From assembly GCA_024679065.1 (NCBI GenBank), contig JAGIQG010000040.1, forward strand, positions 6,200,001 through 6,264,000: a DNA stretch of 64,000 nucleotides. The letters run 5' to 3'. The notes under the pieces were generated by a model, which worked only from the letters and a program-made list of their open reading frames with translations, searched no databases and was not told the origin of the DNA. Shown in pieces: positions 14,526 through 52,079 of this stretch. The position numbers were made by a program, and so were the translations under genes. The number at the start of each line of letters is the position of its first letter. The stretch's first letter is position 1. The stretch is from Sphyrna mokarran (taxonomy: Eukaryota).

Positions 14526-15260
14526 TTTGTTTCCAACAACCGGCTCATGACAGATAAAATCTGCACCCTTCACACCTGCAAAAATAGAAATTAGGACTTT
14601 AGCTGTGTTATTGTCGCTTTATTAGAAACAAGGGAATTAAATAATTGTACATAAAGGAAACAAAAGTGGTGTTGTGAGGAATGAGGAAAGAACAAAAATT
14701 CTGCCCAGTGAAGCAGTTAAGCTACCTCAGTGAGTAGTTTTAAGGCGAAGGTAGATACATGTTTGAACAGTAATGGAATTAAGGGTTATGGTGAGCGGGC
14801 GGCAAAGTGGAGCTAAGTCCACGAAAAGATCAGCTGTGACCTTATTGAATGGTGCAGCAGGGTCAAGGGAGCAAATGGCCTACTCCAACTCCTACTTCTT
14901 ACGTTCTTATGTGCTTATGTTCTTACGCAATTTCATAGCAGTGCCATTGTAAGCTGACTTACGACAGTCGTAAATAGACTTTAAACATAAACTTTTAGTT
15001 GATACAGGGATGGAAATAGCATGAAAGAAAAAATGGGAGCGAATCTATCACATATTGATTTGTGAAATTAATGTTCATTATAGATGTTAGTTAAAAGCAA
15101 CGAATAAAACTTCTCAGTTACTGCTCCCCTGTTCTTATTGGGTGTTGTATTCTGTGTTGGCATTTGTTTAATCACTGTGACCTTCACAGGCTGAGTAATC
15201 GGTCCTGTTTGGCACTGAATGCGCGCCTTCTGCTGATCATTAACTGGAACTTCAATCTGG

Positions 15261-15440
15261 AGTTATCGCCCGGGATCCGCTCGATCTCTGCATCAGTGTG
15301 GGCTCCGTGCTACATAAATACACTGCTCTGCCGGTGAAAAGCACCCCAGCGATATTGAAAGAAAGCATTTTATTTTTCTTGCTGAAACCAGCAGAAAGCC
15401 CCTCTCAAAACCTTGAGAAGTACATGTCCGTACTTTATAA
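15261..15440 (-). pseudogene. 3' remnant of a V gene with RSS CACACTG-24-GCGATAACT
   Basis: Minus-strand ..LSAGFSKKNKMLSFNIAGVLFTGRAVYLCSTEP; spacer and 3' flank homologous to the 41553 gene. Confidence 0.8.
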
Positions 15441-15957
15441 CGTCAACTTTGATTCATGTTTACATCCTTTCTTTGTGTGAACATTTAAGAATTTAATACT
15501 ATCAGTTTTTTTTTCTAGTCCCAAATTGTGTAACAGATTTATCAGTTTGGTCTAGGATATTAAGATCAGATAAGGGAATTGTCGAAGGTTCACACTGAAA
15601 TTGCCATTAGTTATGTGCATATGTCCATCTGTATAAAATTATATTTAATAAGAACAATGGCAGCAAAGAAAAAACGCAGCAACATAATCCAGCAACAATA
15701 TTCTGAAGTAATCTGAGATATCTATGATCTCCCACGTAGTGGTCACTGACCTCACTTTGCCACCAGTGGGAGTGCCCTCTTGTTTGTGTGTTTGTGTGTT
15801 CACTGCAGCAGGGGCAGATTGGATTACACAGAAAACTACTGCGATTGCTGGAATCTGAAACAAAAAGAGAAAACGTTGGAAAATCTCAGCAAGTCTGGCA
15901 GCATCTCTAAGGAGGGAGAAGAGCTGTGTTTCGAGTCCGGATGGCCCGTTTCTCAAA

Positions 15958-16500
15958 GCTGGATTATACAATGGTATGATACAGAGCAGTGATCCAGGGG
16001 AACTGGATTAATTGTGGGCTAACATAGCGATATGTTACAGAGGAATAATCCAGGAGAACTGGATTAGTTATTGGATTACACAGTGATACGTTACAGAGCA
16101 GCAATCCAGGAGATCTGGTTTAATTGCTGGATTACACGGTGATATGTTATAGAGCAGAAATCCAGAACTGTATTAATTGTCGGACTAGAAGTGATACGTT
16201 ACAGAACCGGAATCCAGGAGAATTGAATTAATTGTTGTGTTACACAATGATTTGTTACACAGCCATAATCCAGGAGAACTGGATTAATAATCCATTACAC
16301 ACTGATATGTTACAGATTAGGAATTCAAAATAACTGGATAACACAGTGATATGTCGCATAGAAGTAATCCAGGAGAACTGGATTAATTGTTGGATTACAC
16401 ATTGATATTTTACAGAACAGAAATCCAGGAGCACTGTATTAATTTTTGGATTAACAGTGATATGCTGCAGAGCAGTAATCCGGGAGAATAGAATTAATAA
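15958..16500 (+). repeat. ~56-bp minisatellite, ~10 degenerate units
   Basis: Unit GGATTA-CACAGTG-ATATGTTACAGA-GCAGTAATC-CAGGAGAACTGGATTAATTGTT; period 56 (16023, 16079, 16135). Confidence 0.92.
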
Positions 16501-16699
16501 TCCGCCTACATTATTTGGACTCCGATCACTGTAGGAGGGGCAATAAATCAACACGTGAAATTAAAGCTGAGTAAGTTGTGACACTAACAACGCAGGATGA
16601 GATAAATTCCTAATTGATTTAACAATGTTGTGGAGGGAAGGAAATCTGCCGTCCTTACCCACCATCGCTCAACTGGGACATGAGGCACTCCAGTTATAA

Positions 16700-17650
16700 A
16701 GTGACGGCAGTCCTGTATTAAGCTCTGTCTTTCCCGAATCGTTAATTCAGAGCATTTCTGACAGGAACTGAAGGAATTCAATCTTAACAGGGAAATAATA
16801 GTGGATGAATTATTTGGATTGAAGGCGAAGAAATTTCCAGAACCTGATAACCTTCACCTCTGCGCAGTCAAGGAAGTTGCCCGAGGAGCAGTCCATGCAT
16901 TGGTGGTAATCTTCCAAGATTATACAGACTCTGGAACAGTTGCTGCAGATTGAACGGAGCTAACGTAACCCCACTATATAAAAATGGAGGCAGAGAGAAA
17001 ACAGTTGCAGCAAGCAATAAATATAGCGAATGCAATGTTGGCCTTCAGAGTAAGGGATTCGAGTACAGGAGCAATGATGTCTTGCTGCAATGATATAGAG
17101 TCTCGATGAGGCCACACCTGGAATATTGCGTGCATTTTTATTTCCTTATCTGAGGAAGTACATTCTTGCTCTAGATAGAGTCCAGTGAAGATTTATCAGA
17201 TTGATTCCTGGGATAGCGTGTTTGATATAGGAGGATATATTGAGTAGGCTAGCATTAAGTTATTCGCTGGACTTCGGAAGAATGGGGAGGCATTCATGGA
17301 GACATAAAACTCCGACATTGATAATTAGGGTAGATGAGGAAAAGTTGTTCCCGATGGCGGGGAAGTCCAGGACAAGGGATCAGAGCCTGAGGATTCGGGG
17401 TAAACCTTTTAAAACTGAGATAAGCAGAATTTTCTGCACTTAGAGAGGAATAAACCGATAAAATTCACTACTACAGAAAGAAATTCTGGGCAGAATATTG
17501 TATTTTATCAAGAAGGAGATAGATGCAGTTCTCGGGGCTAAATGAGTCAAATGATACAGTGGGAAAAAAAGGAATAAATTACTGAGTAATAAGATAATGA
17601 CGATGGTGTCGGCTCGAACGGATGAAAGGTGTCCTCGTGCTCCTATTTTC
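16700..17650 (+). mobile_element. CR1-like LINE fragments
   Basis: KSPxPDxxHP-like and NVTPLYKNG-like RT remnants, RPHLEYCV, RVDEEKLFP. Confidence 0.78.
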
Positions 17651-18354
17651 TATTGGACACTGAATCATAATCATTCATTTCTGTAACACAAATACGGAAT
17701 GCTTCAGGGACTAAATGTAATCCCCGGATGTGACGTTGACTGTTAAATGTACAGTCAACTCACAGGGAGACAACGCCGTGTCCTTTAGAATTCATAGAAA
17801 TTGACAAAATGTTTCAATTGTGTTGAATGCAGCAGTCTGACATAGAAACCCACCCACTTGGAATGTGGCTTCACGTATTGAGAAACTGGCGTTTATCCAA
17901 GAACAGGATTGATTTCTCCACCAGAACTACTAATTATTACCCATGAATAAATGAAGGCTGCAGACATTTTTTTCTGGTTAATTATCTCTCTTCGGTGACT
18001 TTCCTGCTCTTTCTTTCTCTTTGTCACAGACTCTGTCTCTATGACGAGACACCCATTCAGTTAGGAAATTTCTTCACTGCTTTAAAATGGCTGGAAGTGA
18101 TTATAAATAATTCAGGGCGGCGTGACCTTTATTGCGGTGTTTTCACATTGACACACGACAATCAGTAAATATCCTTCCTGTTTCATTCAACAAAACAAAG
18201 GTGACCAGAGACCACGAAGATGGCACGGCCAATATAAATTAACGAGAAATAGGAACTGAATAAGCGTTTAAAGGTGAAGGAGTAAGAGGATTTGTCAGCT
18301 GCTGTAAAGAGAATGAGTAATAAACACATTACCTGATCAGTAAATAAAAATAAA

Positions 18355-18650
18355 GCTCCTTTATTAGTCACAAATAGGCTTACATTTGCATTGCAATGAT
18401 GTTACTGTGAAAATCCCATTATTGCCACATCTGGTGCCTTTCCGGGTACATTTAGGGAGAATTTAGCACGGCCAGTGTACCTAACTAGCACGTTTTTGGA
18501 CCATGGGACGAAACTGTAGTATTCGTAGGAAAGTCACGCAGATAGGGGGAGAGCGTGCAGACTCCACACTGACAATGACACAAGTCCCCGATTGAACCCA
18601 GGTTCCTAGCGCTGTGAGGCAGCAATGCGAACACTGCGCCACTGTGCCTT
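18355..18650 (-). mobile_element. tRNA-derived shark SINE
   Basis: Same family as 14225-14525. Confidence 0.8.
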
Positions 18651-18970
18651 TCTCAATCATCATTGCATGACTATTGGAGCTAAAAGTAATAAAGCGGTCA
18701 AATATTGCTGAAAGAATTAATCGATCACAGAATCCTACTGAATGTTCAGAACTTATTTGTTCAAACACAGCGTATCCTTGAATGGGACTCTGAATGATGG
18801 CTCCTGACAACATACCAGAATAATCTGATTAGTCAGAATGTCAACCACCAGTATCCCATAGAATGAGGGGAAAGTGAGGCTCCAGTGTCCTCCCCACCAA
18901 TGACAGTTATGGACACGGTAGCAAATCCCTGTTTGTAAACAAAATCCTCGATTGGCCCATTTTCATCATC

Positions 18971-19190
18971 ACGAACAAAAACATGCTGAAGCTCTGATCC
19001 TGCTGATAGTGTGTGATTTTATTTTTCTAACCAAATGCCATGTTTTAGCAATGTTTTGATCATGTGTATTGGTTTTTCTTTTGTTCACAGCCTTTCAGTG
19101 CGAGGATCAGAGCCCCCATCCTGAACGGGTGCTGTCATAGAAAGGGGATGGGTTGAACCGAACTATCGGCTCTCTGTTGGTTCTGGAAAC
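18971..19190 (+). pseudogene. Truncated V pseudogene of the 47491 family
   Basis: ttgttcacag|cctttcagtgcgaggatcagagcccccatcctgaac aligns with the 47345 exon start; start codon mutated to ACG, in-frame TAG, 3' half missing. Confidence 0.8.
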
Positions 19191-19328
19191 GGTTGGGTGA
19201 ATGTTTGATCCGAAGTTTTTCTGGTTTCCTCTCGCTGTGTTTGAGCAGCTGGCAGCGCCGCTGTTTATTGTGACTGAATCTGCCCACACTTGTAAACAAT
19301 CCGCAGTAGAACAGGAGATCCTATCTAG

Positions 19329-19367
19329 AGTTTTTGTACGGCGATGAGGATGTTTTCTATCACTGTG
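19329..19367 (-). other. RSS CACAGTG-23-ACAAAAACT
   Basis: Abuts V exon. Confidence 0.93.
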
Positions 19368-19845
19368 AGACTGAAAGCACAGTAATAGCCGCCAGCGTCA
19401 GTCAGCTGCAGACCAGAGATGGTTAAACCGGTGATTGCATTTTCGATCTGGAGGTCAGCAAAGAAACGAATTGTCGCAAAATCTGCTTTATCCTCTGTGT
19501 CCCAAGAGCTTTTCTTCACTATGAATTCCAGTTGCATGTCTGGGCGCTGTCGATACCAATGTAAGTAATAATTGGTGGCTGTGGTATCATAGCTACAGAT
19601 CAATGTCACTGCTTCTCCTTCTGCCTTACCAGCTGAGGGGAAGAGTTGAGTGACAGAATCTCCATTAGTCACATCTGAAAAAAAAACACAAATAAACATA
19701 ATCAAATAGAAACTAGTCAGTTCAGAGGTTGGAAATATTTGAAACATGCTTGATCAGTCAAATAAAGGGTGTAAAATAAAGTATTTAATCCGCAATTACC
19801 AGTCAAGAATGCTACCCACACAATCCAGATGCCGAACAGCCGCAT
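19368..19845 (-). CDS. TRAV: TCR alpha/delta V gene, family C (leader 19845-19800, V exon 19674-19368)
   Basis: Leader MRLFGIWIVWVAFLT, GT-AG intron, DSVTQ..LIC..WYRQ..YYCAFS. Confidence 0.93.
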
Positions 19846-20904
19846 TGCCTCTGTCTGCGCTGTAAAGGGGAGTTGAGTATTTGACAGAATGTTTTAAACC
19901 CCGCCTCCAGTAATCTGCCGGTGTAGCCTTATGGTGAACCGGAAACTAGCACAAATTAGTGAGTATGTTCACATTTTCTCAATAATTCTGATAGCTTTAG
20001 CATCAGGATAGTGGTATTCGTGAATCCAATTAAATTACGCTCTGTTAAGCTTTTTTAAATTTAATTCCAGCGTCACTGGTTTATTTGTGCATCCTTGACA
20101 ACCTCGGGAAAGGTGATGAACCGCCTCCCTGAAACATTGCTTTTCAACTGAACTTTATTAACATGCAGAGGGGGCGGGTGTAATTTATTAAAGTCTTCGG
20201 ATAATAAAAAGTGATATTACATAATCAGCTGTAGAGAGAGACAGAAAATCACTGTCAAGGGTTACGTGGAGTTTATGTCACAAGACAGTTGGAATCATGA
20301 ATAGAAAAATATGCTATTCGATTTGCAGGGAAGAGAAAGGAAGTATTAAACAGTGTAATTAATAGGAAACTATTCCTTACTGGTTTGCAGAGCAATTTGT
20401 ATGTTCTTGTACACAAAACACAGACATATAATCTAATGATGGAGCTATCAAAAAGATAGGATAACTGGATGTTGTCCTTTATTCCAAAGCTGACGATGTT
20501 CAGAGAAATTAAATTAAATACTGTTGCGATTGCACTGAATGTTGGCGATATTCAACTGGAAAATAGTGCACAGCCTTAGTAATTAAGAAACCGATTAAAA
20601 GGAATTATTTACTTAAACGTCACTTCTGTCCTGCTCTCTGACACCACTGCGTATTTCTCTGCCATAAATGTAGTGAAAAAGAAAATACATAGAAAATCTT
20701 ATATGGAGATATCCAGTTGGGTCTCACCAGAAGGCGCTGTAAGAGTGTTAAACGGCAGCGACAATGGAAATGACACCGCGAGCGTTGAAAAGACCTTCCA
20801 AAAATGTCTTTAAGTAGGAAACGACACACAGGTGAGAATAAATTCCGGATTTCAGTGCATCAGTGAAACTGGACCTCATAAATGCAAGTATGCAGCACAA
20901 TTGT

Positions 20905-24840: not shown

Positions 24841-24879
24841 CACAGTGGTTTAAAACTCATCTGTCTCTGTACAAAAACC
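24841..24879 (+). other. RSS CACAGTG-23-ACAAAAACC (consensus)
   Basis: Perfect heptamer and nonamer. Confidence 0.95.
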
Positions 24880-25884: not shown

Positions 25885-25889
25885 GTAAG

Positions 25890-26430: not shown

Positions 26431-26549
26431 TACTTCCATCTATCCTGGGCCTGTCCTTAGCTCTCAAGCAGCATCAATGATAATATCAGGTAGTGGTTGT
26501 TGGAGAGCCGCCGACAATAACGATTTCAGCAACAATAGCGGCAATATTA

Positions 26550-28135: not shown

Positions 28136-30301
28136 ATGCATGGACCAGCGAAAGGTCTCTTCTTCGCCATTTTTTATCCCGTTCTCGCTGCCATTGGTAT
28201 TCCTGGTAGGTGAAAAATCCCAACTAATTCTCATGACTTGAAATGTGTGGCTTTACACGAACATTAAAGTTTTACTTTTGAACATTTGGTTTTGTTCGAA
28301 TGTAGTAAAATGCGATCCAGTGCTTTCAGTGTTATGTAGGACAAAGTGTTTAAAGTGACTTGTATTTCATCCACTGGTATGCATAGGCTCAAAAAATGAG
28401 CTGTTACAGTCTAATAAATCGGTTAGATGCATTGAAATAGACCATTCATTCAGTACTTACATGAACCTATGCTGCGACAGCCAGCAGTTAATAATAATTG
28501 ATCTGTAGTGAGGTAGCACTGGGCCACCCACATTGCTATTGACTTTTCAAGAATTAATTATTGGAACTTTTGAAAGAGGTGCGTGGGGTTTCATGTTTCG
28601 TAATGCATTATGCATTTTGTCTTGCTTTGATAAGTCTAGTAAATCTTGGATAATTATATGTTTAATTACTAGCTGTGTGTGTGTAGGATGGCAAGGCAGT
28701 ATTTACACGCGTGATGTCGTTTCCATCTCTCGCTTTCACTTGAAAAAGTGATGTTGGATTTGCTTCTTCAGATATTCGAGTAATTAGGGGATACCTCACA
28801 AGACTTCAACAAATTAAATTTATAACGACTGGCAAAATGATTTAGCTTTTCCCAAAGAAGTTGACTTTATCATCTGAAGCACAAATGGGAAGTTTAATCT
28901 TTGAAAGATGGAATTCTAGAGATTGGGGTCTCGGCAGTAAAGGCACAACTGAAAAGATTAAATCGGGGGCCATGAAAGTTCAGATTCGGGAAGATAGGTG
29001 TAGCATGTTAGCAAAATCGGGAAAGGCGAGATGATGGAGGGATTTCAATTCGAAGCACGAGATTAATTAGAGACGCTGACTGAATGGACCGGATTGGCAC
29101 AAATAAGAGCAACAGCAAATTTTCGGAGAATTTGAAATAATTATCAGAGGGGTCAACTCAGCAGCAGAGAACAGAATTAAAATTTGGACTGAGTGCAATG
29201 TCTCCTGATTTTAAATATTTGTAATCCAGTTTTCAATGTCTTTTCATTGCCAAAGACTTTGCAATCAGTGGAGTCTGGAGGTGGCAAAATGAAGGATGAG
29301 GATGCTTGCAGTAACTCACTGGATGGTGCAGCAACTGGGTTTAGAGCCCTCTCAGTAACACATCTCTCTCTATCTCTTTCTATCTCACAGCCAACTTAGT
29401 GACGATAGTAATCTTATCCCGAGGGCGGTGCGGACTCTCACGGTGCATTACCTACTACCTGGTCGCGATAGCATTGACTGATTTCTTCGTCATCATCACC
29501 GCCATAATCCTCAACCGGATTGGCCGCATCTACTTTCAGAACAGTGTCCTGTCTACCACCCCGGTCTGCACACTCAGCGCTCTCCTGGTCTATTTTGCTC
29601 GGGATGGTTCAGTCTGGCTGACAGTGGCTTTCACCATCGACCGTTTTGTGGCCATTTGCTGCCAGAGCCTGAAGACCAGATTCTGCACGGATAAAACAGC
29701 ATTGCTGGTTATAGGAATGGTCTGTGTTCTGAGTTGCGTCAGGAATGTCCCCTTCTACTTCACTTACCAACCCTTGTACGTCCTGGACGGGGTGCCCTGG
29801 TTCTGTGCCGTTAAGTCTAGCTATTACACGCTGCTCGCCTGGCAAGCCTTTGACTGGCTGGACCACATCTTAACTCCGTTTCTCCCGTTCCTCCTCATCC
29901 TGTTTCTCAACGCTCTAACTGTAAAACACATCTTAGCAGCCAGTAGAGCCCGCAGGAGGCTCCGGGGGAAGGAGGATCACGGGGATCCAGAGATGGCCAA
30001 TCGCAAGAAGTCCATTATTTTGCTCTTCGCCATCTCCCTCAGCTTCCTCCTCCTCTGGGTCACCTATGTATTACACTTCCTCTATGTGCGGATTACAGGT
30101 GAGGGTTACCGCACCAGCCTGGATTTCAAAGACCCCCGGTACATCTTTCAGGAGGCAGCCAACATGCTCCAGTTAGTCAGTTCCTGCAACAACGTCTTCA
30201 TCTACACAGTCTCCCAGAGCAAGTTTCGAGATGACCTGAAAAAGGTTCTGCTATATCCCTTCACCACACTGAAATACACATCAGCATGTGCTTGGATTTG
30301 A
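28136..30301 (+). CDS. GPR139-like: GPR139/GPR142-like orphan class A GPCR, 2 exons (28136-28205, 29391-30301), 326 aa
   Basis: Exon 1 MHGPAKGLFFAIFYPVLAAIGIP splices in phase 1 (GT/AG) to ANLVTIVILSR; seven hydrophobic segments, SVWLTVAFTIDRFVAIC, LPFLLILFLN, NNVFIY; the intron in G-x-P|A-N matches GPR139-type structure as I recall it. Confidence 0.88.
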
Positions 30302-36755: not shown

Positions 36756-37484
36756 GAATCCACTCAACAGGCAAATTCCACCTTGCATTAAACTGGATCC
36801 GCCAGCTGGGGACGCCAAAGAGACTCACTCAGCAACACAAACAGTCAATTTTCTGACTGAAATCAGGTTTTGTGTGCTGGTGAACTGCCACCTTGAACCG
36901 CTGCAATGGCTGAGGTGTAAGTACACCCACACCGCTCCATTTACTGCTGTCCGGGCTGAAGAAAAGAATCGGGAAACACGTGTACGTTCAGCTGTTTGGA
37001 ATTAGCAAGAAACCAAAGATCTGACTGGATAAGAGCTTTTCACTCGTAGAAATGAACTAACTCACAGAAGCAGAGGACGTAACTCAATAATAACTTAATT
37101 TCATGCTCTGTTCAACTCGACCAATAACTTCATGCAAACATGTTGGTATTTGCTTTGAATTTGCTCCTCATTATTGCAGCTTTCTTAAAAGACACTTTTA
37201 CAAAGAACAAAATACCGTTCGTGCAGTCATGTGTTCTGCGTTAACATTATTTTCTCTCGATTTCTAAAGTGATCTATCACATGATGATGTTAAGCATAAT
37301 TATCGGGTGGTAAAAACACCGGGTTTAGTTTGGCCAAAACGAGCAATAGCAATGACAGCGCACTCTGATCGCATTCAGCTCCGTTCCGTCAACTCAGACA
37401 ATGCACTGCATACGAGAAAGGAGGCAAAAGCATCAAATATTTGCCTGTGACCGAATATGTTACCTAGAATCAAAGCAAAGTATT

Positions 37485-37930
37485 GCTAAAGTTCAGAAGG
37501 AGGCTATTCGGCCATCGAGCCTGCACTGACAAGGATCCCACACAGGCATTATACCCATAACTACATGTAACCCTTGTTAATCTCCCTGAAAATAAGGGTC
37601 AATTTATCATGGCCAATCACCCTCATCTGCACATCGTTGAAGTGCAGAAGGAAACCGGTGCACCTGGAGCAAATCCACGCAGAGGGAGGGAGAATGTGCA
37701 GATTCCACTCAGACACTCACCCCCAAGGCCAGAATTGAGCCGGGTTCCTAGTGCTGTGAGAAAGCAGTGGTCCAAGACTGGAACTGAATCCGGGTCCTCA
37801 GTGCTGTGAAACAGCAGTGGCCCAAGACCAGAATTAAACCTGGGTTCCCGGTGCTGTGAGTTAGCAGGGGCTTAAGAATGGAAATGGATCTGGGTTCCTG
37901 ATGCTGCGAGACTGTAGCAGCAACCACTCT
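37485..37930 (-). mobile_element. SINE with four tandem ~50-nt copies of its tRNA-like head (37723-37920)
   Basis: Repeated ccaagaccagaattgaacctgggttcc.gtgctgtgag..agcagtgg units. Confidence 0.78.
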
Positions 37931-41552: not shown

Positions 41553-42058
41553 ATGATGGGGATCCAGTTCTTTCCCATCCTCATCACTATCTCACTTCTC
41601 AGTAAGTATTCCTTCCCAATAAAACTCCATTCTACCCTCACTGCTGTAACCCAGATATTATTGTTATTAAAACAATTGTGACGGTGTTGATGATAATTGC
41701 ATCATTTAATTTGAGGCTGACTCTGATTGTCACTATTGTTGTTACTTCCGTTAGAATGGAGCCAGCAAGACAAAGTGGAACAACTGGATTCTGAAATATC
41801 GCTTAAAGAAGGAAATAATGTCACAATGACCTGTTCTTTGGAAACAAGCAGTTACAGCCCTAATGTGTATTGGTACAGTCAGCAGCCTGGGAAAGCTCCA
41901 GTGTACATGTTTCGGCTTATTGGAGAGAACGTGCAAGGGAACACCGCCCTCGATAATCGGATTTCTTCTAAATTTGATAGAAAGAACAAGACTACCGAGC
42001 TAACGATCAGTAACACACTGATCTCTGACAGCGCCGTGTATTTCTGTGCTATGGAGCC
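41553..42058 (+). CDS. TRAV: TCR alpha/delta V gene (leader 41553-41601, V exon 41755-42058)
   Basis: Leader MMGIQFFPILITISLL, GTAAGT donor, TTAG acceptor, KVEQ..MTC..WYSQ..YFCAMEP. Confidence 0.92.
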
Positions 42059-42098
42059 CACATTGCTGCAGAGATATAGCGAATCCTGTACAAAAACC
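42059..42098 (+). other. RSS CACATTG-24-ACAAAAACC
   Basis: Spacer counted as 24 nt. Confidence 0.88.
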
Positions 42099-43423
42099 CC
42101 ACACAGGCAGTTCCAGGTAGTGCCCACTGGGGGTGCGCTCACAGAGACGCGGGCAATTCAGTTTCCACAGTGACAGTGACAGGAAGATTGTTCAAATTGC
42201 AACAAAACACAACACTCAAAAACAGCAACTGGTGTTGTCCAGCTGCACATTTTCATTAGTTAAAATCGTAACTTACATTTGCAGTTGAAATAAGACTGAC
42301 AGATCAATCTAAGAACATTCACGCCTTTTTTTTGGTTTTCTATACCTTCCCCTGCCTATTTATTCCAAACCACTCTTATCTTTACTGATTTATGGGAGTT
42401 GTGCACATTTCCCTTTTCTAGTCTTTAACGTAAGCATTTAAAGCTTTTTTCTGATGCCTTGTACATCCATTCAGAATCTCCCCAATTTCTCTGCTCAGCT
42501 ATTCAGCCCCACTTTCTATCCACATCACTGATGAAGATCACGCTTTGTAATGAATCATTTACTAACCCTGGCACTCCTGTTGCGAGACTGCTCGTACGCA
42601 GTATGGATTGGACATTCAGCTCCCACACTTTTAGAGGAGCAAAATTATAGAATTTTTAATGTGCCATTCTTAGTGAGATCAAACCCTTGCAAATAAATCC
42701 TAGCTGTCACCACATTGCACGTGGTAGCCCCATCCACAGCTTTCTTGTGCTGTTTTCACTCTGACCCGTCTCACCTGTGCTGTTTTATTTGAGATTTTAT
42801 TGGAGATATTGATCTTTGCCACTTTTCCGTGTTTGGCACTGATTAGATCAGTAGTTGAATGGAGAGGCAAAATATATTTCCACGTCTGAAAGAAAATTTC
42901 ATAGACTACACGTTACAAAGTGAGTGAACATCAAGTGGAAATATCTCAGCCCATTCATTATTCTATTCACTCTTATGAAGTAGATGTTTCAACTAAACAT
43001 TCATCCTCCCCCGCATCATAGCTGCTACCCCAAACATGATTGATAACAAACCGTTATGTTGCTGTCAGGATGAATATTGTCATTCTCCATGTCGAAACAC
43101 AGCCATTAAGACTCAGGGGACCGGTCGTTGCCTGAAATGACGGTTGAAGAGGAAAGTAATCCCCTGTCGTGGGATGGTCAAATTCACTTTGTTGCTTTGG
43201 TCCCTCCGTCAAGAGGACGAATTGGAGATGAAGGAACTGTGAGTTCATTGCTTGAATTGGAGATCAAAGGAGCTTGAAGCGGATTGGGTGTTATCTGATG
43301 ATGTATTCAGCAGTGAACCAACCAACGTGAACCCGGATATGACTCAACCTGTTCCCAACTCTTGACTAAACACCTTCAGCTTCAACGCATTCTGGTCAAA
43401 TCCGCTTCCTGCTCTCTGCAAAC

Positions 43424-44328: not shown

Positions 44329-44367
44329 CACAGAGACACAGAGCTGGGCTGAACCTGTACAAAAACT
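44329..44367 (+). other. RSS CACAGAG-23-ACAAAAACT
   Basis: Abuts V exon. Confidence 0.92.
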
Positions 44368-46267
44368 GTCAGAGCCTCGCTCAACATAACAGAGCGTGAG
44401 GCAAACATTGGATCAGAGTGAGTCTGAAATGGAACCTGAAATCCTAGTGATTTCTCAATCTTGTATTGAGAATACTTTTATGAATAATAGGTATATTGCA
44501 AAATTAAAACAGGGACACATAAAAGAATTAGCTTGAGAATATTTGTAAATTTTAATGCCCCGAAGCGTTTTATGCAATTAACACAGCAGCTATTTTTGGG
44601 CTCGTAGTGATATTATTTCATTCAGTAATATTGTACTGTTCTGTCTGTGTCAGTCATTGTGATTGGTGAACAGATGTTGAACAGGATCTTTCTCTTGCTC
44701 TTTTTGGAAACATTGACCATCCACCTGGGAGGGAAGACGATTTCCCAAATTTAACAAGTCATCGAGAGGTTGACAGCTCTGACGGTGCAGCATTTTTAAG
44801 CTCTGCACTGTCCCTTCAGTAAGTTTCCGGAGTATTGTTCCAGATAGATTGCCGGTGTCCTCTGGAGTGGAACGAACCTCTGAAGGGACTGGAAACAGAA
44901 TCCGGGAAGTCCCAGTCCGTGGTGATCACTCTTTAACCCAATCTGGGAAAAACAAACTGAAATAATGAAAATGAAATTAAAAATTAATATTATCGGTTCC
45001 CGTGGAATCAGAAAGACAACCTGTACAAACATACCGCTCGAAAAAAAGACCTACTTTTACTGATAAAGCGCCTTTCATCGACTCCAGAGATCAAATGAGG
45101 CTTGCGAACCTAAGGAATTTCATTTTCAGCGTAGTTGTTGTGGTGATGTTACCAACTTCAGTGGGAATGTTTAATTCTCAGTCAGAAATTCTCGTCACTC
45201 TGACCCTGGGGTAAAGGGATTGGAGAATCCAAATGTGTGCCAGTTACATTGAACTTGTCGCAAATTTGAATCAAATAATGGACACATCTCTCTCTCTCTT
45301 CTCTTTCTTTCTCTCTTTCCACTCATCCTTGCTCTTTCTCTTTCTGCTACATTGAGGAGCCATATTGACGATCCATATTGTCCTGAACGTCGTACTCAGA
45401 CTACCCAATGACCTTAGAATAGAGAGTTCACTCTCTAAGTCTCCGGTTCACCCCACCTCCCTTATTCTCCAGGCATCATGCTCTGACATGGTGTTAGGAG
45501 ACCAAAAACTTCCATTAGATTGCTCCATGATTATGCCTGACAAATTACTACAGTGGTTTTCATTTCCTCCTGCAGTATGTGTGACCAGGAAACTCTCCTG
45601 TTCTCACCACCTGTTATTAGGCATACTGGAAGAATTGAGACCCTGATATTCAACATTTGGTGAGAAGGAGAATACAGTTCTGTTGCCGAAAGACCGCAAA
45701 GCAGTTTCGAACCCAAAGTTTCTTGTCCAGAAGACCTGCTTCAATGCCGGGTCTTCCATAATTGACATAAAAGCTCTTGCTCTAAATACACTGCGGTTTG
45801 TGGGGTGGAGGCGTACAGATGTTTCCTCTAACTCCAGCTGCCACCTGTTACAGGGGGAACTGACGGTTCTATAAAGGCTCAGCGAAACAGGACATCATCA
45901 GTAAAGCAATAATCCTCTATGTTGATCTCGAATATTGTTACATGATTTCGCAGGATTTATATTGCGGTGGTTTATTATGGGTTTTATTACTTCAATGTTA
46001 CGACTTCTATATCTGATACCACTGTTATTATTTTCATTTTTCTCTATTTGTTGCTTGTGTTGCTTTACGATCATTTGTCTCAGTTTTCTGATGAGTCAAA
46101 GGATAATTTGTATGTTTCTAATGTTTTTTTTTCTGGAAGTTCTATTATTAGATACAATAAAATATATTGTTTTAATTCCATGATATAACTCGCAAGTAAA
46201 ACATGTTATATCGATATTGCTTTTAAAGACCATGGGATGTTTGTCTCCACAGTGCCCATGTCCTGTG

Positions 46268-46587
46268 AGTTATTGTACAGGCTTTGCATCTCTCTGCTTC
46301 ACCCGTGCCTCAACTGCACTGTATCCACCACAGCATCTGACAGTCCGACCGTGTTAATACTGAGACCGATGTATCCTTTCTCATTGCCTTCAAAACTTTA
46401 AACCTTCCCTCAGTTGTTCCATCTCTGAATGTGGAAACGACATTCTCTGGAGTTTGATCGGTGAATTGCCCGTACTAATATACAAACTCATTCCCAGTAA
46501 CAGCAATATTGTGATGAAGAGAGATGGTCTGCCCTTGATTTACCCGATACATTTATATCTGAAATGTCTTCTAGTGACAACGAACAT
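46268..46587 (-). pseudogene. V pseudogene (distant relative of the 47491 gene)
   Basis: Acceptor then DVRCH*..VNQGQTISL..VY*YGQ..TEGRF..LSINTVGLSDA; nonamer ACAATAACT, damaged heptamer CACGGGT. Confidence 0.75.
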
Positions 46588-47024
46588 CTGTCAAAACAAG
46601 AACAAAATTAAACTGAAGATACAGATCGGGATAATTAAATAAAGTTCTTATGCATATTGGCTAAAAAACTTAACTAATGATCTATCCACCTATCTGTCTG
46701 CCTGCATCTAACTGTCAACATATCTACCTCTTATCAATCTGAAGATTTACCTATATCATGTTGATCTACCTTTTTGTCGATTATCTATCTAGATATTTTA
46801 CAGGTAGATTTTTCAGCCTTCCGCTTTAATTTGCTTGTGGAACAACGAAACAGTTCTTTTTAACTTAATATGCTTCGATACTCTGTACTTTTAATTACAG
46901 CTTTAGAATATTATAACGCTATTTAAATTGAACATTGAATGTGGGAAAGTAACATTGAAGAATATCAACGGCATTTCTGATTTGCAGAAAACTTAAAAGT
47001 GCAGCGGAGACAGGGTAGTGAACA

Positions 47025-47063
47025 GGGTATTGTACAGGGGGATCCGCTCTTTGTCTCACTGTG
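47025..47063 (-). other. RSS CACAGTG-23-ACAATACCC
   Basis: Consensus heptamer, two nonamer mismatches. Confidence 0.85.
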
Positions 47064-47491
47064 GCTGCTTCGCACACAGATACATTCCAGAGACAAGGAC
47101 CGTGGTCTCATCTGTAGACATGGTGCAGGAATTCTTTACTCGGTCAAAGGACTGTGTATATCGTCCTTCAGTCGCATTCCCCTGGTAAAGGGAGGCGAGA
47201 ATTGTTGGAGGTCCTATCAATGTTTGTCTGTACCAGGCTATTGTATCACCTGGAGCAACAGAGAGCCCACACCTGAGTTCAACCCGCTCCCCTTCCCAAG
47301 ACATGACCTGCTCAGGATGGGAGCTCTGATCGTCACACCGAACAGCTGTGAACAGAAGAAAACCAATCATTTACTATACGGTGTGAAGAGATTGTTAAAA
47401 TAATCCGTCTGAGTAAATCAATAAACTCACAAAATATCAGCAGCATCAGAGCTCCAACTGGAAATAGCTCTTTGCGGGGATTTCCCTTCAT
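47064..47491 (-). CDS. TRAV: Divergent TCR-type V gene (leader 47491-47431, V exon 47345-47064)
   Basis: Leader MKGNPRKELFPVGALMLLIF, GTGAGT donor, LRC..WYRQ..YLCAKQ; short domain. Confidence 0.85.
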
Positions 47492-49064
47492 GATTGATGA
47501 AGGTGCACAACAGCATCAATCAGGATCTACTTTCAAAACTGGGACTTGCAGCCGAGGCCCAGACTCTGAATGGCGGGGAGGGAGAGGCGAGAGCTTTACA
47601 TTCTCCCCTTCAATGTGAGACCGAAGGGCCACACTGTCACCGATTGGACAGTTATGGGATATCGGTATCTGACGTTTCTCACGGTGCCACTCAGCAATTG
47701 GCTGTTTCTCAAACCGAAAACCACTTGAACCGTCACTACTTCCGAATATCTCCTTCCTCTCTGTAGCAACAAAGTAAATTGTTTGCAAGACTTGTGCTCT
47801 GGCGTCTTTCTAATTGAAAAGGGCTGTTCATAATCTTGGAATCGTAAACTGTGATAGTACTAACAGAGACCATTCGGCACATTGCTCACGTACTATCTCT
47901 GTTTATAGGTTATCCACTTATTCTTTATCGGCACTTGCATTCAATGTATCTTATATTCTTAAAATTTCCATTTGCTTGTCATGTATTTATCCACTTCTCT
48001 ATGAAAATTACTTATGGTTTGTCCACATTACAGCTTGGCATGAACCATCGCATTCTCTAACAGTCGACTGCTCAAAACGCAGTCTACTAATCGCTCCTTC
48101 CACTGCATAAATATCACGAGAAATACCGCCATCCAGTCACGCATTGAGGGGTTAGCCGATTGTCCCTGCTCCTTCTTAACCTTTTCCAAATCTGTCTTGA
48201 TTGGGTATAAGTCTGACAATCACTTCTGAACAGAATGCTGCTCTACAGAAAATAACCCCCATTTGCTCAATTCTCCGCTGAGAATAGTGCTCTCTCATTC
48301 CTTCACCATCTTTCCCAGTCTCTCTTAAACACTATCACTGAGATTAACGCTGAAGGTATGAAGAGTCACTGAACGGATCCCTGTGTTTGAACGGTGTTCT
48401 CAACAATTGTGTGTGCAGGCTTACATGTGCCCCCTTGTGTTTTGATATCTGTTTCCTTGTTCAGAAACCTCGGATTCTGTCTCTATTTAATCCCATCCAC
48501 AGCTTGTTCTCTGATTTTTTGTTTAAGTGTTTAATTATCGGTGTTACAAAAAGGACTGCATTAATACTGCAATGAAATGAATATGAAAATCCCCTAGTCG
48601 GGATCATGAACAAAGCCCAAATTTATCAATAGGGCGATTTCCAATGGCTGGTCTTCGAGTGACGTGTTTCAGAAAATTTAAATAACAAGTAAATATTTGT
48701 AATGTTAAAGAAAAATCACAATCTACTTTGTTAAAGTTTCTGTTTATTTAATCTGACCTTTAATCTATCATATTCCGTGCTTTTTTTCCAGTCTCTTCCA
48801 CTTCTTTTTCAATAATTTCCTCATTTCTGTCACTTCTCTATGAAGATTGAATTTCTCTAATTCCAATTGCTGCTCACTCATTCCGGCTTACGTGTCCCTT
48901 CTCCTTTCTCCATCTCTGTTTTCATCAATCTTCATTTCTGACGGGATATTAATCAGTAGATTCTATATTTTATTTTGCATTGCTCTCATTTCGTTTGTTA
49001 ATAAACCTTTTTTATAATTCCACCACTCTACCGATACTGCAGGATGTCTCTCGCAGTCGGTGCA

Positions 49065-49103
49065 GGTTTTTGTATGGGACCTCCCCATGTTTGTCACATT
49101 GTG
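49065..49103 (-). other. RSS CACAATG-23-ACAAAAACC
   Basis: Abuts V coding end. Confidence 0.92.
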
Positions 49104-49436
49104 CCTCACGGCACAGAGATAGGTGGCAGTGTCTGTAACTCCGGCATCTCTCACAGTCAGGACGCTGAATTTGTTGCCTCCGCCGATTGAGGCAGTGACC
49201 CTCTCGCTTTGATCGGATTCTCTTGTGGCCATCAGCAGATACTGCGGTGGCTGATTCGGGGACTGTCTGTACCAATGCAAGATGTTAAAAGCAATGGTCG
49301 AGGTACAGTTCATGGATACGGTTCCCCCTTCACTCACAACCTTCCGCCGAGGGAGCTGCTTCACCTCATCTGCTCCAGTCATCCCAGTGCAGGTCAGAGT
49401 GAAAAACAGCAAAGAGAATCTGTAAATTCGGAGCAT
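49104..49436 (-). CDS. TRAV: TCR alpha/delta V gene, apparently single-exon leader+V
   Basis: MLRIYRFSLLFFTLTCTGMTGA contiguous with DEVKQ..MNC..WYRQ..YLCAVR; no AG at the usual acceptor position. Confidence 0.82.
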
Positions 49437-49927
49437 TTTACAGATCACATGAAACTTCTGCTGAAGCAGCTGTCCAGGGAGTTGAGTGTCGAATTGGGAT
49501 ATGGATATAATCACAAGAAATAATAAGGATTCACAAACGCGCTCCAGTTGCAACTGAGGCGTCCCTCTGTCGAACTGATGAAAGAAGCTGAGACTCGCTC
49601 ACGGATATCGATTCTACCGTAATCTGAGATAGAGAATTGAAGCCGGAATAAATAAACCTCATCGGCAACCCCATGTTTCCGGTTACAAATCTCGTCCCAC
49701 GTGTCTACCTAGGAAACCATTTCGTCCGAACAGAACACTGACTGAACCCAGCTCAGAGTGAATTCATTCATTGGCAGCCAGCTCACCAACTACTAACACC
49801 ACAGCACCACCCCGGACACAGGGAAATGCAGTGAGAACCTCCCGAGACACGGCAGGCAGCAAAATACACAGGATGAAGTTTGGAAATTTTGTCTTCAAAT
49901 ATCCAACTCCCCCTATGCAGAGTGACA

Positions 49928-50398
49928 ATGCGGCATTTGGGTTGTTTGGGGAATATTCCTAACGGAGAATTGTGAACCAAACACATTGCACATTTACTTT
50001 CATTATATAAAAATGGTTTAATACTGAATTTTGAGTATTCAGTCTGTCTGATCTATTTCCGTGGACATTTTTTTCAGATCTCAGTCATGGCGATTCTATC
50101 ACTCAATCGCTATTCTCAGAATTAAAGGAGAAAGAGAAACAGTGACTTTAAATTATACTTTTAATGCAATAACGAGCAAGTACAATTCATACTGGTACCG
50201 GTATCTAGATACACAGCCCGTGTTTATATTGAGGAAAAACTCGATATTTGGTGAAGATATAGTTGTTTCTCTGCAGAGTTCGGGCACCGAGTAAATTCAT
50301 CAATTTGACTATCTCGGATATGAAGCTGATTGACGCTACCCTGTACTATCGCTGGGACTGACAGTGATGGAAAGTAGTGTGACTGTTGTACACAGGCT
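49928..50398 (+). pseudogene. V pseudogene, family C-related
   Basis: Deleted leader, exon from 50078 DLSHGDSITQ..VTLNY..YWYR, frameshifts, RSS GACAGTG-23-ACACAGGCT. Confidence 0.82.
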
Positions 50399-50834
50399 GC
50401 ATTTAAATATAGTTGAAACCGTGTTTGCTGCGGGTTGCACAAAATCGCGGGCAGATGCGACTGCAATGTGACTGTCAACCACACAAGAGATCTCATTAAC
50501 CTGGGATCAACCCAAGTGTTTCCAGTTTCCTGCTACGTCAGTCATTATGTCGCTGTGAGTCTGTGAGATCTCTCAGTAGTGAGCTGGCTGATATTGAAAG
50601 AAAACAACTCGAGCTGGGTTCATTCAGCATCTCGATAGGGGAATGAGTGCACTTTTCCAGATGATGTTACAGGAATGAAACCCTGCTCTGTAAATTAGCA
50701 GCTACAAATTCTGGGTTACTCATAGTAACACAAACATTCCAGCATTAAGGAAACATTCTGAAGTTTACTGATCATTGGTGGAACTCTATTCTCAATATCT
50801 ATTTCAGAGGTAGTAAGAAGTCTCTCAACAGTAG

Positions 50835-51250
50835 AGGGGAGACCATGCAGACGCGACGACAACGAATGAACACCGCTCAACAATCGCCAGGCAAGAACGT
50901 TCCCTTCCAGTGGAGAAAGACTTCAGCAATCACGGCCTCTGATTTTCGGGTAAACGTTCTTGAAGGCGAACTTCACGACGCACGACAACATAGAATCGCT
51001 GAGCTGAAACTGATAGCCAAGTTCCGCACACATGAGGACTCAACCGGTATTTTGGATTCATGTCATACTGTCTGCAACTCCCACGGCTTTCCCGGGCTTG
51101 GAAAGTCTCACTTCCTGTCCTGGCTGGAGACAATACGCACCTTTTAAATTTGTGCTTGGCCCTCTCTCCATTCACATTGCCTGTAGCTTTAAGACTTGAT
51201 TATGTGTGAAGATCGCATTCCAACGATTATCTTGTAAATTGAGTTTGTGT
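50835..51250 (+). mobile_element. Penelope-like element GIY-YIG C-terminal fragment
   Basis: GETMQTRRQRMN...ASDFRVNVLEG...RIAELKLIAKFRTHED. Confidence 0.72.
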
Positions 51251-51641
51251 TTGTGACTTGTTTCTCCACATCATATTTTGAAAGTCGCAGTCACTTCCGT
51301 GCGAAATTTCCGTGTTTTGTATACACTTTCTCTGAAGCAGGAAAACTCTCGGATCAAATAAATCCAGAGAACAAGCCATGGTAAGAAGACTTCAGAACCT
51401 GATGGGCATTGAGTTGCTGAATACTTGACAGGCACAGAAACTGGATCAAAAGACGATTGCTAAGCAAAAGAGATCAGATAGATGTAAGAAAATCAGCGAG
51501 CCCAACTGCGTTGAAATTAAGTAATTTGTCAAATTCGTCAAATGTCCCTTTCCTCTTGTTGAGATTGTGTTCTGTACTGATGTTTAAGGAAGGCACATGT
51601 GATTCTCTCAGTGGAGAGTGAATCTGTTTATCGGTGTGAGA

Positions 51642-51655
51642 GCTCCCTCTGGTGG
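51642..51655 (-). promoter_or_regulatory. RSS-adjacent CTCF motif CCACCAGAGGGAGC
   Basis: One mismatch to core; 24 nt past the nonamer. Confidence 0.68.
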
Positions 51656-51679
51656 CAGCTTACTGGAACTCCCAGTCTG

Positions 51680-52079
51680 GGGTTTTGTCCGGGAATAGCT
51701 CGATCGCGACAGCAGTGGTCCAGAAAGACACAGCGTTGTCAGAGAGAAGAACCCCGGATTATTTAAAATAGCAGTTTCGTTTCCTTTGTGCAAACAGTAG
51801 AAAACCTGGCAAATCTTAAGATAAGTATCCGCACTGCATTCTATTGAGAATAAAAGATCTGGATGTACCAGAACAGAGTTGGTTCACGGTAGGTTGTTGA
51901 CTAACCACAGTCTGGTATTGTGCTCTGTCCTTCCAGAATTGTTAATTCAGAAGGAGCCTGGGACAACGAATCATCGCTATTATTTCGTATAACACAAAGC
52001 CAGAGTGCTCCAAAAATCAGAAATTAAACACAACAATAACACACTGACTGCACGGAGACACAACACACAGCAAGAACAT
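51680..52079 (-). pseudogene. V pseudogene (family B-like FR1, 41553-like RSS flank)
   Basis: DSLSQAPSELTILEGQ..DCG*..TLFWYIQ, deletions, heptamer broken, 24-nt spacer then ACAAAACCC. Confidence 0.8.

What the first reader, a model, noticed from the sequence alone, without database searches (positions are those of the whole stretch)
15223..51688. CTCF-like sites at a fixed 24-25 nt downstream of the RSS in three V segments
Seen: three V segments with related RSS flanks (remnant at 15261-15440 on -, intact 41553 gene on +, pseudogene at 51680-52079 on -) carry a CTCF-like core 24-25 nt past the nonamer, always in the gene's orientation: TCAGCAGAAGGCGC (15236-15223), CCACTGGGGG[T]GCGC (42124-42138, one extra base) and CCACCAGAGGGAGC (51655-51642). 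Each has an upstream module 12 nt before the core (TGAAGTTCC, GGCAGTTCC, GGGAGTTCC), as in the extended CTCF motif. Known: RSS-proximal CTCF elements raise use of D-proximal mouse Igh VH genes by impeding cohesin loop extrusion during RAG scanning. Inference: a similar RSS-CTCF arrangement may exist in a shark TCR locus, by deep conservation or convergence. The best-matching sites sit on dead V segments, so these may be retained as anchors.
Basis: partly seen in the sequence, partly recalled or inferred. Interest (0 to 1): 0.8.

Follow-up and report, generated by a model that had tools for sequence, protein, structure and literature searches.

The report
CTCF-type sites behind V-gene recombination signals
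Four related receptor V segments carry the same two-part CTCF-type site 24-25 bases behind their recombination signal, as some mouse antibody V genes do, but here it is intact only on a dead gene.

Summary
The window is a TCR-type V cluster with 16 V segments or relics. The three named sites lie where stated, 24-25 nt past the nonamer, in gene orientation. I found a fourth copy behind a V relic at about 20.7 kb.

They are one inherited cassette, not independent events. It has an upstream CTCF module (GCWGTNCC), a 9-nt gap (not 12) and a core.

With a CTCF matrix recalled from memory:
- Pseudogene V14p scores 21.5 bits.
- Remnant V6rem scores 14.2.
- The new relic scores 11.7.
- The only intact gene, V10, scores 3.3, so its core is broken.
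- The other 12 V flanks score below 5.

CTCF-like motifs are enriched window-wide: 11 at 14 bits or more against 0.9 in shuffles.

The V exon bodies align no better than shuffled sequence, yet RSS and cassette stay 56-73% identical. Column conservation tracks the matrix's information content (rho 0.71). This suggests past selection for CTCF binding.

The closest known thing is the RSS-associated CTCF sites of mouse and human Igh (17-19 bp). The cross-species check was inconclusive.

First-stage notes report the same arrangement in at least five other stretches of this genome; I could not check them. That the genome is a shark comes from the notes, not my calls.

The parts
15297..15404 (-). V6rem: relic of the FR3 end of a V exon, preceded by stop codons
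   Evidence: Translation gives ...EGLSAGFSKKNKMLSFNIAGVLFTGRAVYLCSTEPT after two stops. tblastn with V10 gives 37.5% over 32 aa, E 4e-4.
15261..15300 (-). V6rem RSS relic: heptamer CACACTG, 24-nt spacer, degenerate nonamer GCGATAACT
   Evidence: Read; aligned with V10.
15221..15253 (-). V6rem cassette: upstream module GAAGTTCC (15253-15246), 9-nt gap, core matrix hit 15239-15221 (14.2 bits)
   Evidence: module 6 of 7, P 0.007.
20634..20699 (+). relic20k: FR3-end relic (about 20634-20663), decayed RSS with nonamer-like AGAAAATCT (20691-20699).
   Evidence: Sequence; alignment A3.
20707..20739 (+). relic20k cassette: module-like AGATATCC (20707-20714), core matrix hit 20721-20739 (11.7 bits)
   Evidence: nhmmer with the cassette profile, E 0.005.
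41553..42058 (+). V10, intact V gene: leader 41553-41601, intron, V exon 41755-42058
   Evidence: Open frame and splice sites read. Pfam V-set E 9.8e-15. Among the three best PDB matches (the top one an antibody construct) are a TRA@ chain and a V delta 1 chain.
42059..42098 (+). V10 23-type RSS: CACATTG, 24-nt spacer, ACAAAAACC
42107..42139 (+). V10 cassette: perfect upstream module GCAGTTCC (42107-42114), 9-nt gap, broken core from 42124 (best forward 3.3 bits; reverse 11.2 bits at 42136-42118)
   Evidence: (module 7 of 7, P 0.0003).
51721..52079 (-). V14p, V pseudogene with four in-frame stops; exon closest to the V3/V5/V16 family, not to V10
   Evidence: translation; tblastn gives 55% aa identity to V3 over 38 aa, and V10 gives no hit at E up to 10.
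51681..51720 (-). V14p RSS relic: heptamer shortened, spacer like V10's, nonamer one A short
51640..51672 (-). V14p cassette: upstream module GGAGTTCC (51672-51665), 9-nt gap, core matrix hit 51658-51640 (21.5 bits)

Best explanation
The four sites are copies of one ancestral cassette of about 40 bp. [quoted passage not shown] It begins 8-9 nt behind the nonamer of a 23-type RSS and points away from the V.

A clan of TCR-type V segments inherited it together with the RSS, while their coding exons diverged so far that their bodies no longer align as DNA. The positions that matter for CTCF are the ones that stayed the same, so the cassette was probably kept for CTCF binding during the clan's history.

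Where intact, bound CTCF would have its cohesin-stalling N-terminal side facing away from the V. It would halt cohesin arriving from that side next to the RSS. This is the mechanism described for D-proximal mouse VH genes.

In this window the system is mostly relict. Only pseudogene V14p has a fully credible site, two relics have weakened ones, and the intact V10 has lost the core.

Shown: motif, spacing, orientation, conservation pattern, enrichment. Inferred: CTCF binding, cohesin stalling, any role in recombination.
For: 1. Core strength: V14p scores 21.5 bits. Three hits of at least 21 bits were seen in the window against 0.01 in 200 dinucleotide shuffles.
2. Upstream module at the same 9-nt distance in all copies: V10 7 of 7, V14p and V6rem 6 of 7 (null P 0.0003 and 0.007). 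The same module and spacing occur at unrelated strong sites (35604, 53272).
3. The two-part motif is reported conserved from lamprey to human (PMC5504073, passages). An upstream consensus resembling CAGCTGTTCC is bound by zinc fingers 9-11 (PMC12885311, passages).
4. Position: 3 of 16 V flanks have at least 11.5 bits at the same offset, against 0.003 in shuffles.
5. Island of conservation:
- V exon bodies align at shuffle level (0.48-0.56 against about 0.49).
- Heptamer plus spacer: 0.56-0.73.
- Cassette: 0.61-0.71 (null 0.47, sd 0.04).
- Beyond +111: shuffle level.
6. V14p's exon belongs to a different family from V10's.
7. Column conservation follows matrix information content: rho 0.71, P 0.001. 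Motif-critical columns average 0.68 against 0.40 for the others, one-sided P 0.003.
8. Neutral-decay simulation: the three best scores are kept in 0.0001-0.0009 of runs at the divergence estimated from neighbouring columns (q 0.39), and in 0.003-0.025 at q 0.30.
9. The window is rich in CTCF-like motifs: 11 at 14 bits or more against 0.92 in shuffles. The IUPAC core with up to 1 mismatch gives 6 against 0.87.
10. Known counterpart: mouse Igh RSS-associated sites sit 17-19 bp behind the nonamer, and the site is more conserved than the spacer (PMC6746451, passages). Such sites promote use of proximal VH and impede scanning (bioRxiv 10.1101/2020.01.01.891473, passages).
11. Loop-extrusion signatures are reported in little skate (bioRxiv 10.64898/2026.10.19.759930, passage).
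Against: - No binding data of any kind.
- Only one clan has the cassette (4 of 16). The other 12 of the 15 flanks first examined have nothing.
- The only intact gene, V10, has a broken core.
- The one outside relative found (P0001, 78% aa identity) can encode at most a 12.4-bit core whatever its codons.
- The conservation tests carry ascertainment bias, because the family was noticed for matching the motif. They rest on four sequences. At a lower assumed divergence (q 0.2) the neutral model is not rejected (0.08-0.31).
- The matrix was recalled from memory.
- Cassette identity (0.61-0.71) is not significantly above that of the next 75 nt (0.49-0.63).
- Two copies face one way and two the other, so they cannot all face the J/C end.
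- The cross-species lay-out showed only 40 of 776 differences, so conservation in relatives is unknown.
Confidence: 0.5

Rival explanations
1. Neutral passenger. A CTCF-like sequence happened to lie in the flank of an ancestral V, was copied with it, and is simply decaying. It never mattered for binding or recombination.
For: - All four copies descend from one flank.
- The cassette is confined to one clan.
- The only live gene has a broken core.
- P0001's tail allows at most 12.4 bits.
- The neutral model is not rejected if per-copy divergence is as low as 0.2.
- Cross-species data were uninformative.
Against: - The two-part structure has the canonical gap.
- Conservation tracks matrix information content.
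- Exon bodies and distal flank align at shuffle level while the cassette is 61-71% identical.
- The neutral model is rejected at the divergence estimated from adjacent columns.
Confidence: 0.2
2. Real CTCF sites whose job is general locus architecture (loop anchors or insulators between V units), not help for the neighbouring RSS. Their place next to the RSS is historical. This is why they persist on dead V segments and were lost on a live one.
For: - The best sites are on a pseudogene and relics, whose RSS and exons have decayed more than the motif.
- The window holds other strong CTCF-like motifs that are not next to an RSS.
- In mouse TCR alpha/delta, bound sites are mostly upstream of V promoters or intergenic (PMC5859386, Table 2 passage).
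Against: - The fixed 24-25 nt spacing in four copies despite a variable spacer sequence parallels the Igh sites, for which an RSS-linked role was shown in mouse (PMC6746451 and bioRxiv 10.1101/2020.01.01.891473, passages).
- The excess retention over the RSS (38 of 45 against 33 of 48 cells, hand count) is not significant.
Confidence: 0.2
3. The cassette is a fragment of a mobile element that carried a CTCF site and landed behind an ancestral RSS.
For: - CTCF sites spread by retrotransposons in mammals (stated in PMC5504073, passage).
- A tandem repeat at about 37720-37900 has one unit with AGTTCCAG, CCAC and TCTCACA in similar order.
- A high-copy repeat lies 360 nt from the V14p cassette.
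Against: - Contig depth over the cassette bin 51570-51666 (X1: 232) is like the single-copy flanks (86-315), against 10^4-10^5 for the true repeat at 50794-51278.
- The cassette profile finds strong copies only behind V segments or relics.
- The other units of the 37.8-kb repeat lack the module.
Confidence: 0.03
4. The conserved block binds some other factor, or serves the RSS itself, and the likeness to CTCF is coincidental.
For: In V10 (and, as far as its protein shows, in P0001) the AGTTCCAG module is kept although the core is broken.
Against: Both halves match the CTCF two-part motif at the right distance, and the conserved columns are the ones CTCF reads. V10 and P0001 are close enough for 11 nt to be shared by descent alone.
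Confidence: 0.05

Closest known systems
RSS-associated CTCF-binding elements of mouse and human Igh (D-proximal VH families, e.g. the VH81X element)
   Same: - A CTCF core lies at a fixed short distance downstream of the V nonamer.
- Orientation is fixed with respect to V transcription.
- The site is more conserved than the spacer between RSS and site.
- Upstream and intergenic classes of sites coexist in the same V cluster.
Sources: PMC6746451, passages; PMC5859386, Table 2 passage; bioRxiv 10.1101/2020.01.01.891473, passages.
   Different: - Spacing is 24-25 nt to CCA here. In mouse it is 17-19 bp to a core written two bases earlier; in human 19 or 48 bp.
- The locus is TCR-type, not Igh.
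- The lineage is said to be a shark (not verified by my calls).
- An upstream module fills the gap between nonamer and core.
- V segments lie in both orientations, so the sites do not all face one way.
- Here 3 of 4 copies are on dead V segments and the live one is broken.
- Binding and function are shown in mouse and untested here.
Promoter-proximal CTCF sites of mammalian TCR alpha/delta V genes
   Same: A dense set of CTCF sites in a TCR V cluster. This window also has promoter-type motifs 200-300 bp upstream of V2 and V4p. PMC5859386 reports 144 bound sites in 1.8 Mb, many upstream of V promoters.
   Different: The finding's sites are behind the RSS, not at promoters. That class is listed for mouse Igh and for only 2 sites in TCR beta (PMC5859386, Table 2 passage).
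Two-part CTCF motif (core plus upstream module read by zinc fingers 9-11)
   Same: Module GCWGTNCC, gap and core as described (PMC12885311, PMC5504073, PMC11417384, passages). Such sites are reported as the stronger insulators.
   Different: Nothing structural. Here the motif is only predicted.

Membership tests
RSS-associated CTCF-binding element (Igh type) | Match to the CTCF core motif | tested here: inconclusive
   V14p 21.5 bits, V6rem 14.2, relic20k 11.7, V10 3.3. The matrix was recalled from memory. The IUPAC core with up to 1 mismatch finds only V14p of the four.
RSS-associated CTCF-binding element (Igh type) | Fixed short distance downstream of the V nonamer | tested here: met
   24, 24, 25 and 25 nt between nonamer and CCA/TCA in 4 of 4 copies. 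Mouse is 17-19 bp (PMC6746451).
RSS-associated CTCF-binding element (Igh type) | Constant orientation relative to V transcription, pointing away from the V | tested here: met
   4 of 4 are in gene orientation. Direction relative to the J/C end could not be tested.
RSS-associated CTCF-binding element (Igh type) | Site more conserved than the RSS-to-site spacer | tested here: met
   Mean pairwise identity: spacer before the module 0.38, module 0.71, high-information core columns 0.69, three bases before the core 0.22. rho 0.71. Four sequences only.
RSS-associated CTCF-binding element (Igh type) | CTCF and cohesin occupancy in lymphocyte precursors | not testable with these tools
   No ChIP or accessibility run was among the 9 runs listed.
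RSS-associated CTCF-binding element (Igh type) | Raises use of the attached V, and sits on functional V genes | tested here: not met
   In this window 3 of 4 copies are on dead V segments and the intact V10 has a broken core. V usage itself could not be measured.
Two-part CTCF motif | Upstream module at the usual distance from the core | tested here: met
   Module matches 7, 6, 6 of 7 at a 9-nt gap in V10, V14p and V6rem; 5 of 7 in relic20k by my count. The consensus is from PMC12885311 and from recall.
Transposon-borne CTCF site | Cassette embedded in a multi-copy element | tested here: not met
   Depth over the cassette is like single-copy flanks. The profile search finds strong copies only behind V segments or relics.

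The most novel reading that the evidence does not exclude
An RSS-adjacent, outward-facing two-part CTCF element is an ancestral part of the V gene unit in jawed vertebrates. It is older than the split of cartilaginous and bony vertebrates and is shared by TCR and Ig loci. On this reading, cohesin-driven presentation of RSSs to RAG is about as old as V(D)J recombination itself. The element outlives its V, so dead V segments are kept as loop anchors. First-stage notes of the same arrangement in at least five other stretches of this genome, some behind divergent V families, would fit this, but I could not check them.
Probability: 0.15. Interest if true: 0.85.

Novelty: new member of a known kind. 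Interest (0 to 1): 0.5.

Why it matters
RSS-adjacent CTCF sites are a key piece of the loop-extrusion model of V gene choice. In what I read, they are described for mouse and human Igh (with site counts for chimpanzee and rabbit) and two sites near an RSS in mouse TCR beta.

My three searches of the paper library listed no paper on CTCF sites at antigen-receptor loci of cartilaginous fish. For some searches I judged this from titles and abstract starts. One search listed only 12 of 2,498 papers.

If the arrangement holds across this locus and binds CTCF, the layout is either very old or was invented twice. A multi-megabase TCR locus with V segments in both orientations would then be a natural test of how orientation of RSS and CTCF site interact.

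In this window alone the case is modest: one clan, mostly dead copies.

Tried and rejected
- Orthologues by protein search. The V10 exon found 1 protein among 4 candidates (P0001). I used only its read-through tail: any DNA encoding it scores at most 12.4 bits. This is an upper bound, not a measurement.
- Cross-species check by reads. Contigs of three other organisms cover V14p and the cassette at roughly 8-15% difference, but only 40 of 776 differences were printed. None printed lies in 51565-51768. Unlisted stretches of 200-470 nt occur elsewhere too, so this says nothing.
- Pattern scan of metagenome contigs for heptamer, nonamer and module. It gave 1 hit, L001, with no V gene beside it. 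I take it as a chance match (my estimate was about 0.5 expected).
- Earlier-findings search by sequence gave nothing.
- First segment-identity script. Free end gaps with harsh penalties gave meaningless values. I replaced it.
- A 2-mismatch pattern hit at 37764-37785 looked like a fifth copy. It lies in a tandem repeat with no V relic, so I rejected it.
- The flanks of V3, V5 and V16 align to the cassette with an 18-nt gap in place of the core. That is suggestive of a lost core but too weak to claim.
- An NF-kappaB-like or other-factor reading of GGGAGTTCC holds for one copy only, so I dropped it.
- Supplements were not opened. Tables S1-S3 of PMC6746451 (site lists, other species) may bear on spacing and on which species were examined.

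Full report
WHAT THE WINDOW IS

The 64-kb window holds no N. An RSS scan plus the ORF list give 15 V segments with an RSS or RSS relic, on both strands. A sixteenth relic turned up later.

The V exons are Pfam V-set domains. V10's three best solved relatives are an antibody construct first, then a TRA@ chain and a V delta 1 chain; most of the 60 listed are antibody V domains. All clear RSSs are of the 23-spacer type. I call the cluster TCR alpha/delta-like on that basis.

None of my calls names the organism.

CHECK OF THE OBSERVATION

The three sequences are at the stated coordinates, in gene orientation, with 24-25 nt between nonamer and CCA/TCA. V10 is intact: ATG at 41553, leader to 41601, V exon 41755-42058, RSS 42059-42098 with heptamer CACATTG and a 24-nt spacer. 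V14p has four in-frame stops and a damaged heptamer. V6rem is only the FR3 end of a V exon.

I scored the window with a CTCF count matrix recalled from memory (MA0139.1-like). Its consensus agrees with the cores printed in PMC12885311 and PMC6746451.
- V14p scores 21.5 bits and V6rem 14.2.
- V10 scores 3.3 forward and 11.2 on the other strand.
- V10 has G in place of the near-invariant A of CCAnnAG, and further changes downstream.

The upstream module ends 9 nt before CCA in all three, not 12.

A FOURTH COPY

A profile of the post-nonamer cassette, searched over the window, returned 18 rows at E up to 50.
- The top three rows are the known copies (E 1e-15 to 2e-13).
- The fourth is at 20712-20755 on the + strand (E 0.005).
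- The other 14 rows are weaker. Eight of them fall on other CTCF-like sites.

The sequence there shows an FR3-end relic, a decayed RSS with a nonamer-like AGAAAATCT, 24 nt, and then TCACCAGAAGGCGCTG (11.7 bits). It aligns with the other three.

So 4 of 16 V segments or relics carry the cassette: two on each strand, each in its gene's orientation. Three are on dead V segments.

IS IT MORE THAN CHANCE?

Window-wide, matrix hits are far above 200 dinucleotide shuffles:
- At 14 bits or more: 11 observed against 0.92 (maximum 5).
- At 18 bits or more: 5 against 0.08.
- At 21 bits or more: 3 against 0.01.

One of the 11 (63710) lies in a dispersed repeat. The IUPAC core with up to one mismatch gives 6 against 0.87, and 0 of 100 shuffles reach 6.

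For position, 3 of 16 flanks have at least 11.5 bits with the matrix starting at +18 to +28. The mean in 3000 shuffles was 0.003. The other 12 of the 15 flanks first examined score below 5 bits on either strand within 150 nt.

The upstream module GCWGTNCC was allowed a gap of 8-10 nt. It matches 7 of 7 in V10 (null P 0.0003) and 6 of 7 in V14p and V6rem (0.007). It also matches 6 of 7 at the unrelated strong site 35604.

So V14p is a convincing two-part CTCF motif by sequence. The four copies share descent, so the position is one event, not four.

WHAT KIND OF RELATEDNESS

The copies are not recent duplicates. Pairwise global identity by segment, against shuffles:
- V exon bodies: 0.48-0.56 (null about 0.49).
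- Heptamer plus spacer: 0.56-0.73.
- Cassette: 0.61-0.71 (null 0.47, sd 0.04).
- +34 to +110: 0.49-0.63.
- Beyond +111: null.

By tblastn, V14p's exon is closest to V3/V5/V16 (55% over 38 aa) and gives no hit with V10. V6rem is closest to V10. The RSS-plus-cassette block is therefore an island kept among V segments of different families.

Within the block, mean pairwise identity by column class:
- Spacer before the module: 0.38.
- Module: 0.71.
- The three bases before the core: 0.22.
- High-information core columns: 0.69.
- Low-information core columns: 0.40.

Conservation correlates with matrix information content (rho 0.71, P 0.001). Motif-critical columns exceed the rest (0.68 against 0.40, one-sided P 0.003).

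I simulated neutral decay from a generous ancestor. It keeps the three best observed scores in:
- 0.0001-0.0009 of runs at the divergence estimated from adjacent columns (q 0.39).
- 0.003-0.025 of runs at q 0.30.
- 0.08-0.31 of runs at q 0.20.

Caveats: there are only four sequences. The family was noticed because it matches the motif. The columns after the core were compared without gaps.

RESULTS AGAINST A PRESENT FUNCTION

- The only live gene has lost the core.
- P0001, the single outside relative (78% aa identity), is an ORF that reads through RSS and flank. It keeps WQF Q, which is consistent with GGCAGTTCCAG. But no DNA that encodes its tail can score above 12.4 bits.
- Two copies face each way, so they cannot all face a recombination centre.
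- The cassette is absent from 12 other V flanks.

CROSS-SPECIES ATTEMPT

One run holds 64% of the stretch's sampled words. Eight others hold 5-7%.

I laid contigs of X1 and of three other organisms on 50600-53500 at 80% likeness. The others' contigs cover V14p and the cassette with about 8-15% differences (for example X9 record 23, 42 other letters over 468 nt). Only 40 of 776 differences and 12 of 129 indels were printed.

None printed falls in 51565-51768, but equally long unlisted stretches occur elsewhere.

The same call shows the cassette is not part of a high-copy repeat. Summed contig depth in its bin for X1 is 232, against 10^4-10^5 at 50794-51278.

COMPARISON WITH WHAT IS KNOWN

PMC6746451 (passages read) describes three classes of CTCF sites in the mouse VH region: RSS-associated, upstream and intergenic.
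- About 30% of sites are RSS-associated.
- They lie 17-19 bp behind the nonamer and are D-proximal.
- The site is as conserved as the RSS and the spacer is not.
- More than 98% share one orientation.
- In human the distances are 19 or 48 bp.

A preprint of the Ba et al. study (10.1101/2020.01.01.891473, passages) states that CBEs directly downstream of proximal VH genes promote their use and impede scanning. It also states that all VH CBEs are convergent with IGCR1 CBE1.

PMC5859386 (Table 2 passage) places mouse TCR alpha/delta sites mostly upstream of V promoters, with '2 near RSS' in TCR beta.

The two-part motif is reported from lamprey to human (PMC5504073, passages). Upstream-module sites are reported as stronger insulators (PMC11417384 and PMC12885311, passages). 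Loop-extrusion signatures are reported for little skate (10.64898/2026.10.19.759930, passage).

Three searches listed no paper on CTCF at antigen-receptor loci of cartilaginous fish. For some searches I judged this from titles and abstract starts; one search listed 12 of 2,498. That the forward motif points toward its loop partner is standard convention, recalled, and not taken from a call.

VERDICT

The cassette is best read as an RSS-associated CTCF element of the Igh kind, in a new locus type and lineage. It has a slightly longer spacing and an upstream module filling the gap. In this window it is largely a relic.

Membership is met on layout, orientation and conservation pattern. It is untested on binding. 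It is not met on association with functional V genes here.

First-stage notes report the same arrangement in at least five other stretches of this genome. They also report promoter-type sites nearby. They are unchecked leads, but they are why I keep a 0.15 chance that this is a locus-wide, ancient feature.

Noticed in passing
window 7030-7048 (+), 10530-10548 (+), 1567-1549 (-), 36799-36817 (+): Promoter-type CTCF-like motifs in gene orientation. Two homologous sites (15.5 and 20.1 bits) lie about 290 and 210 bp upstream of the V2 exon and the V4p ATG. A 12.3-bit site lies upstream of V1. Its flanks look alike to the 36799 site (by eye), which has no V behind it.
   Followed up: partly
window 35604-35586 (-), 2342-2360 (+), 53272-53290 (+): Strong two-part CTCF-like sites away from any RSS. 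35604 and 2342 are homologous (65% over 197 nt). All three have a TGCAGT/TGTAGT module at the same distance. 2342 and 53272 lie about 1.2 kb upstream of minus-strand V1 and V14p and point the other way. Overall, 8 of the 11 hits at 14 bits or more are on the + strand.
   Followed up: partly
window 50794-51278: Very high-copy repeat: summed contig depth is 10^4-10^5 in four runs of four organisms, against about 100-300 beside it.
   Followed up: no
window 29399-30301 (+): Intact 300-aa single-exon ORF with a rhodopsin-family 7tm_1 domain (E 1.1e-19) in the middle of the V cluster. A first-stage note calls it GPR139-like.
   Followed up: partly
window 42160-42215 (+) and 15179-15140 (-): A second heptamer-like CACAGTG about 70-85 nt behind the nonamer of V10 (with a short ACAGTG tandem) and of V6rem (an RSS-like match with a 24-nt spacer). 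It may be a relic of a duplicated RSS.
   Followed up: no
window 37720-37900 (-): Tandem repeat of about 57 nt. One unit resembles the cassette in three short blocks. From recall, it looks like a tRNA-derived SINE head.
   Followed up: partly
window 63653-63846 and 13949-14143: Dispersed repeat (77% over 205 nt) that carries the CTCF-like hits 63710 (14.6 bits) and 14086 (11.1 bits). Part of the motif excess at moderate scores therefore comes from repeats.
   Followed up: partly
window 9313-9360, 12587-12640, 62809-62860 (+): The flanks of V3, V5 and V16 align to the cassette with an 18-nt gap where the core would be, then share CTCTCAC...ATCAGA. This may be a cassette that lost its core.
   Followed up: no
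L001 1106-1163: A metagenome contig matches the heptamer, nonamer and module pattern but has no V gene beside it. I take it as a chance match.
   Followed up: yes
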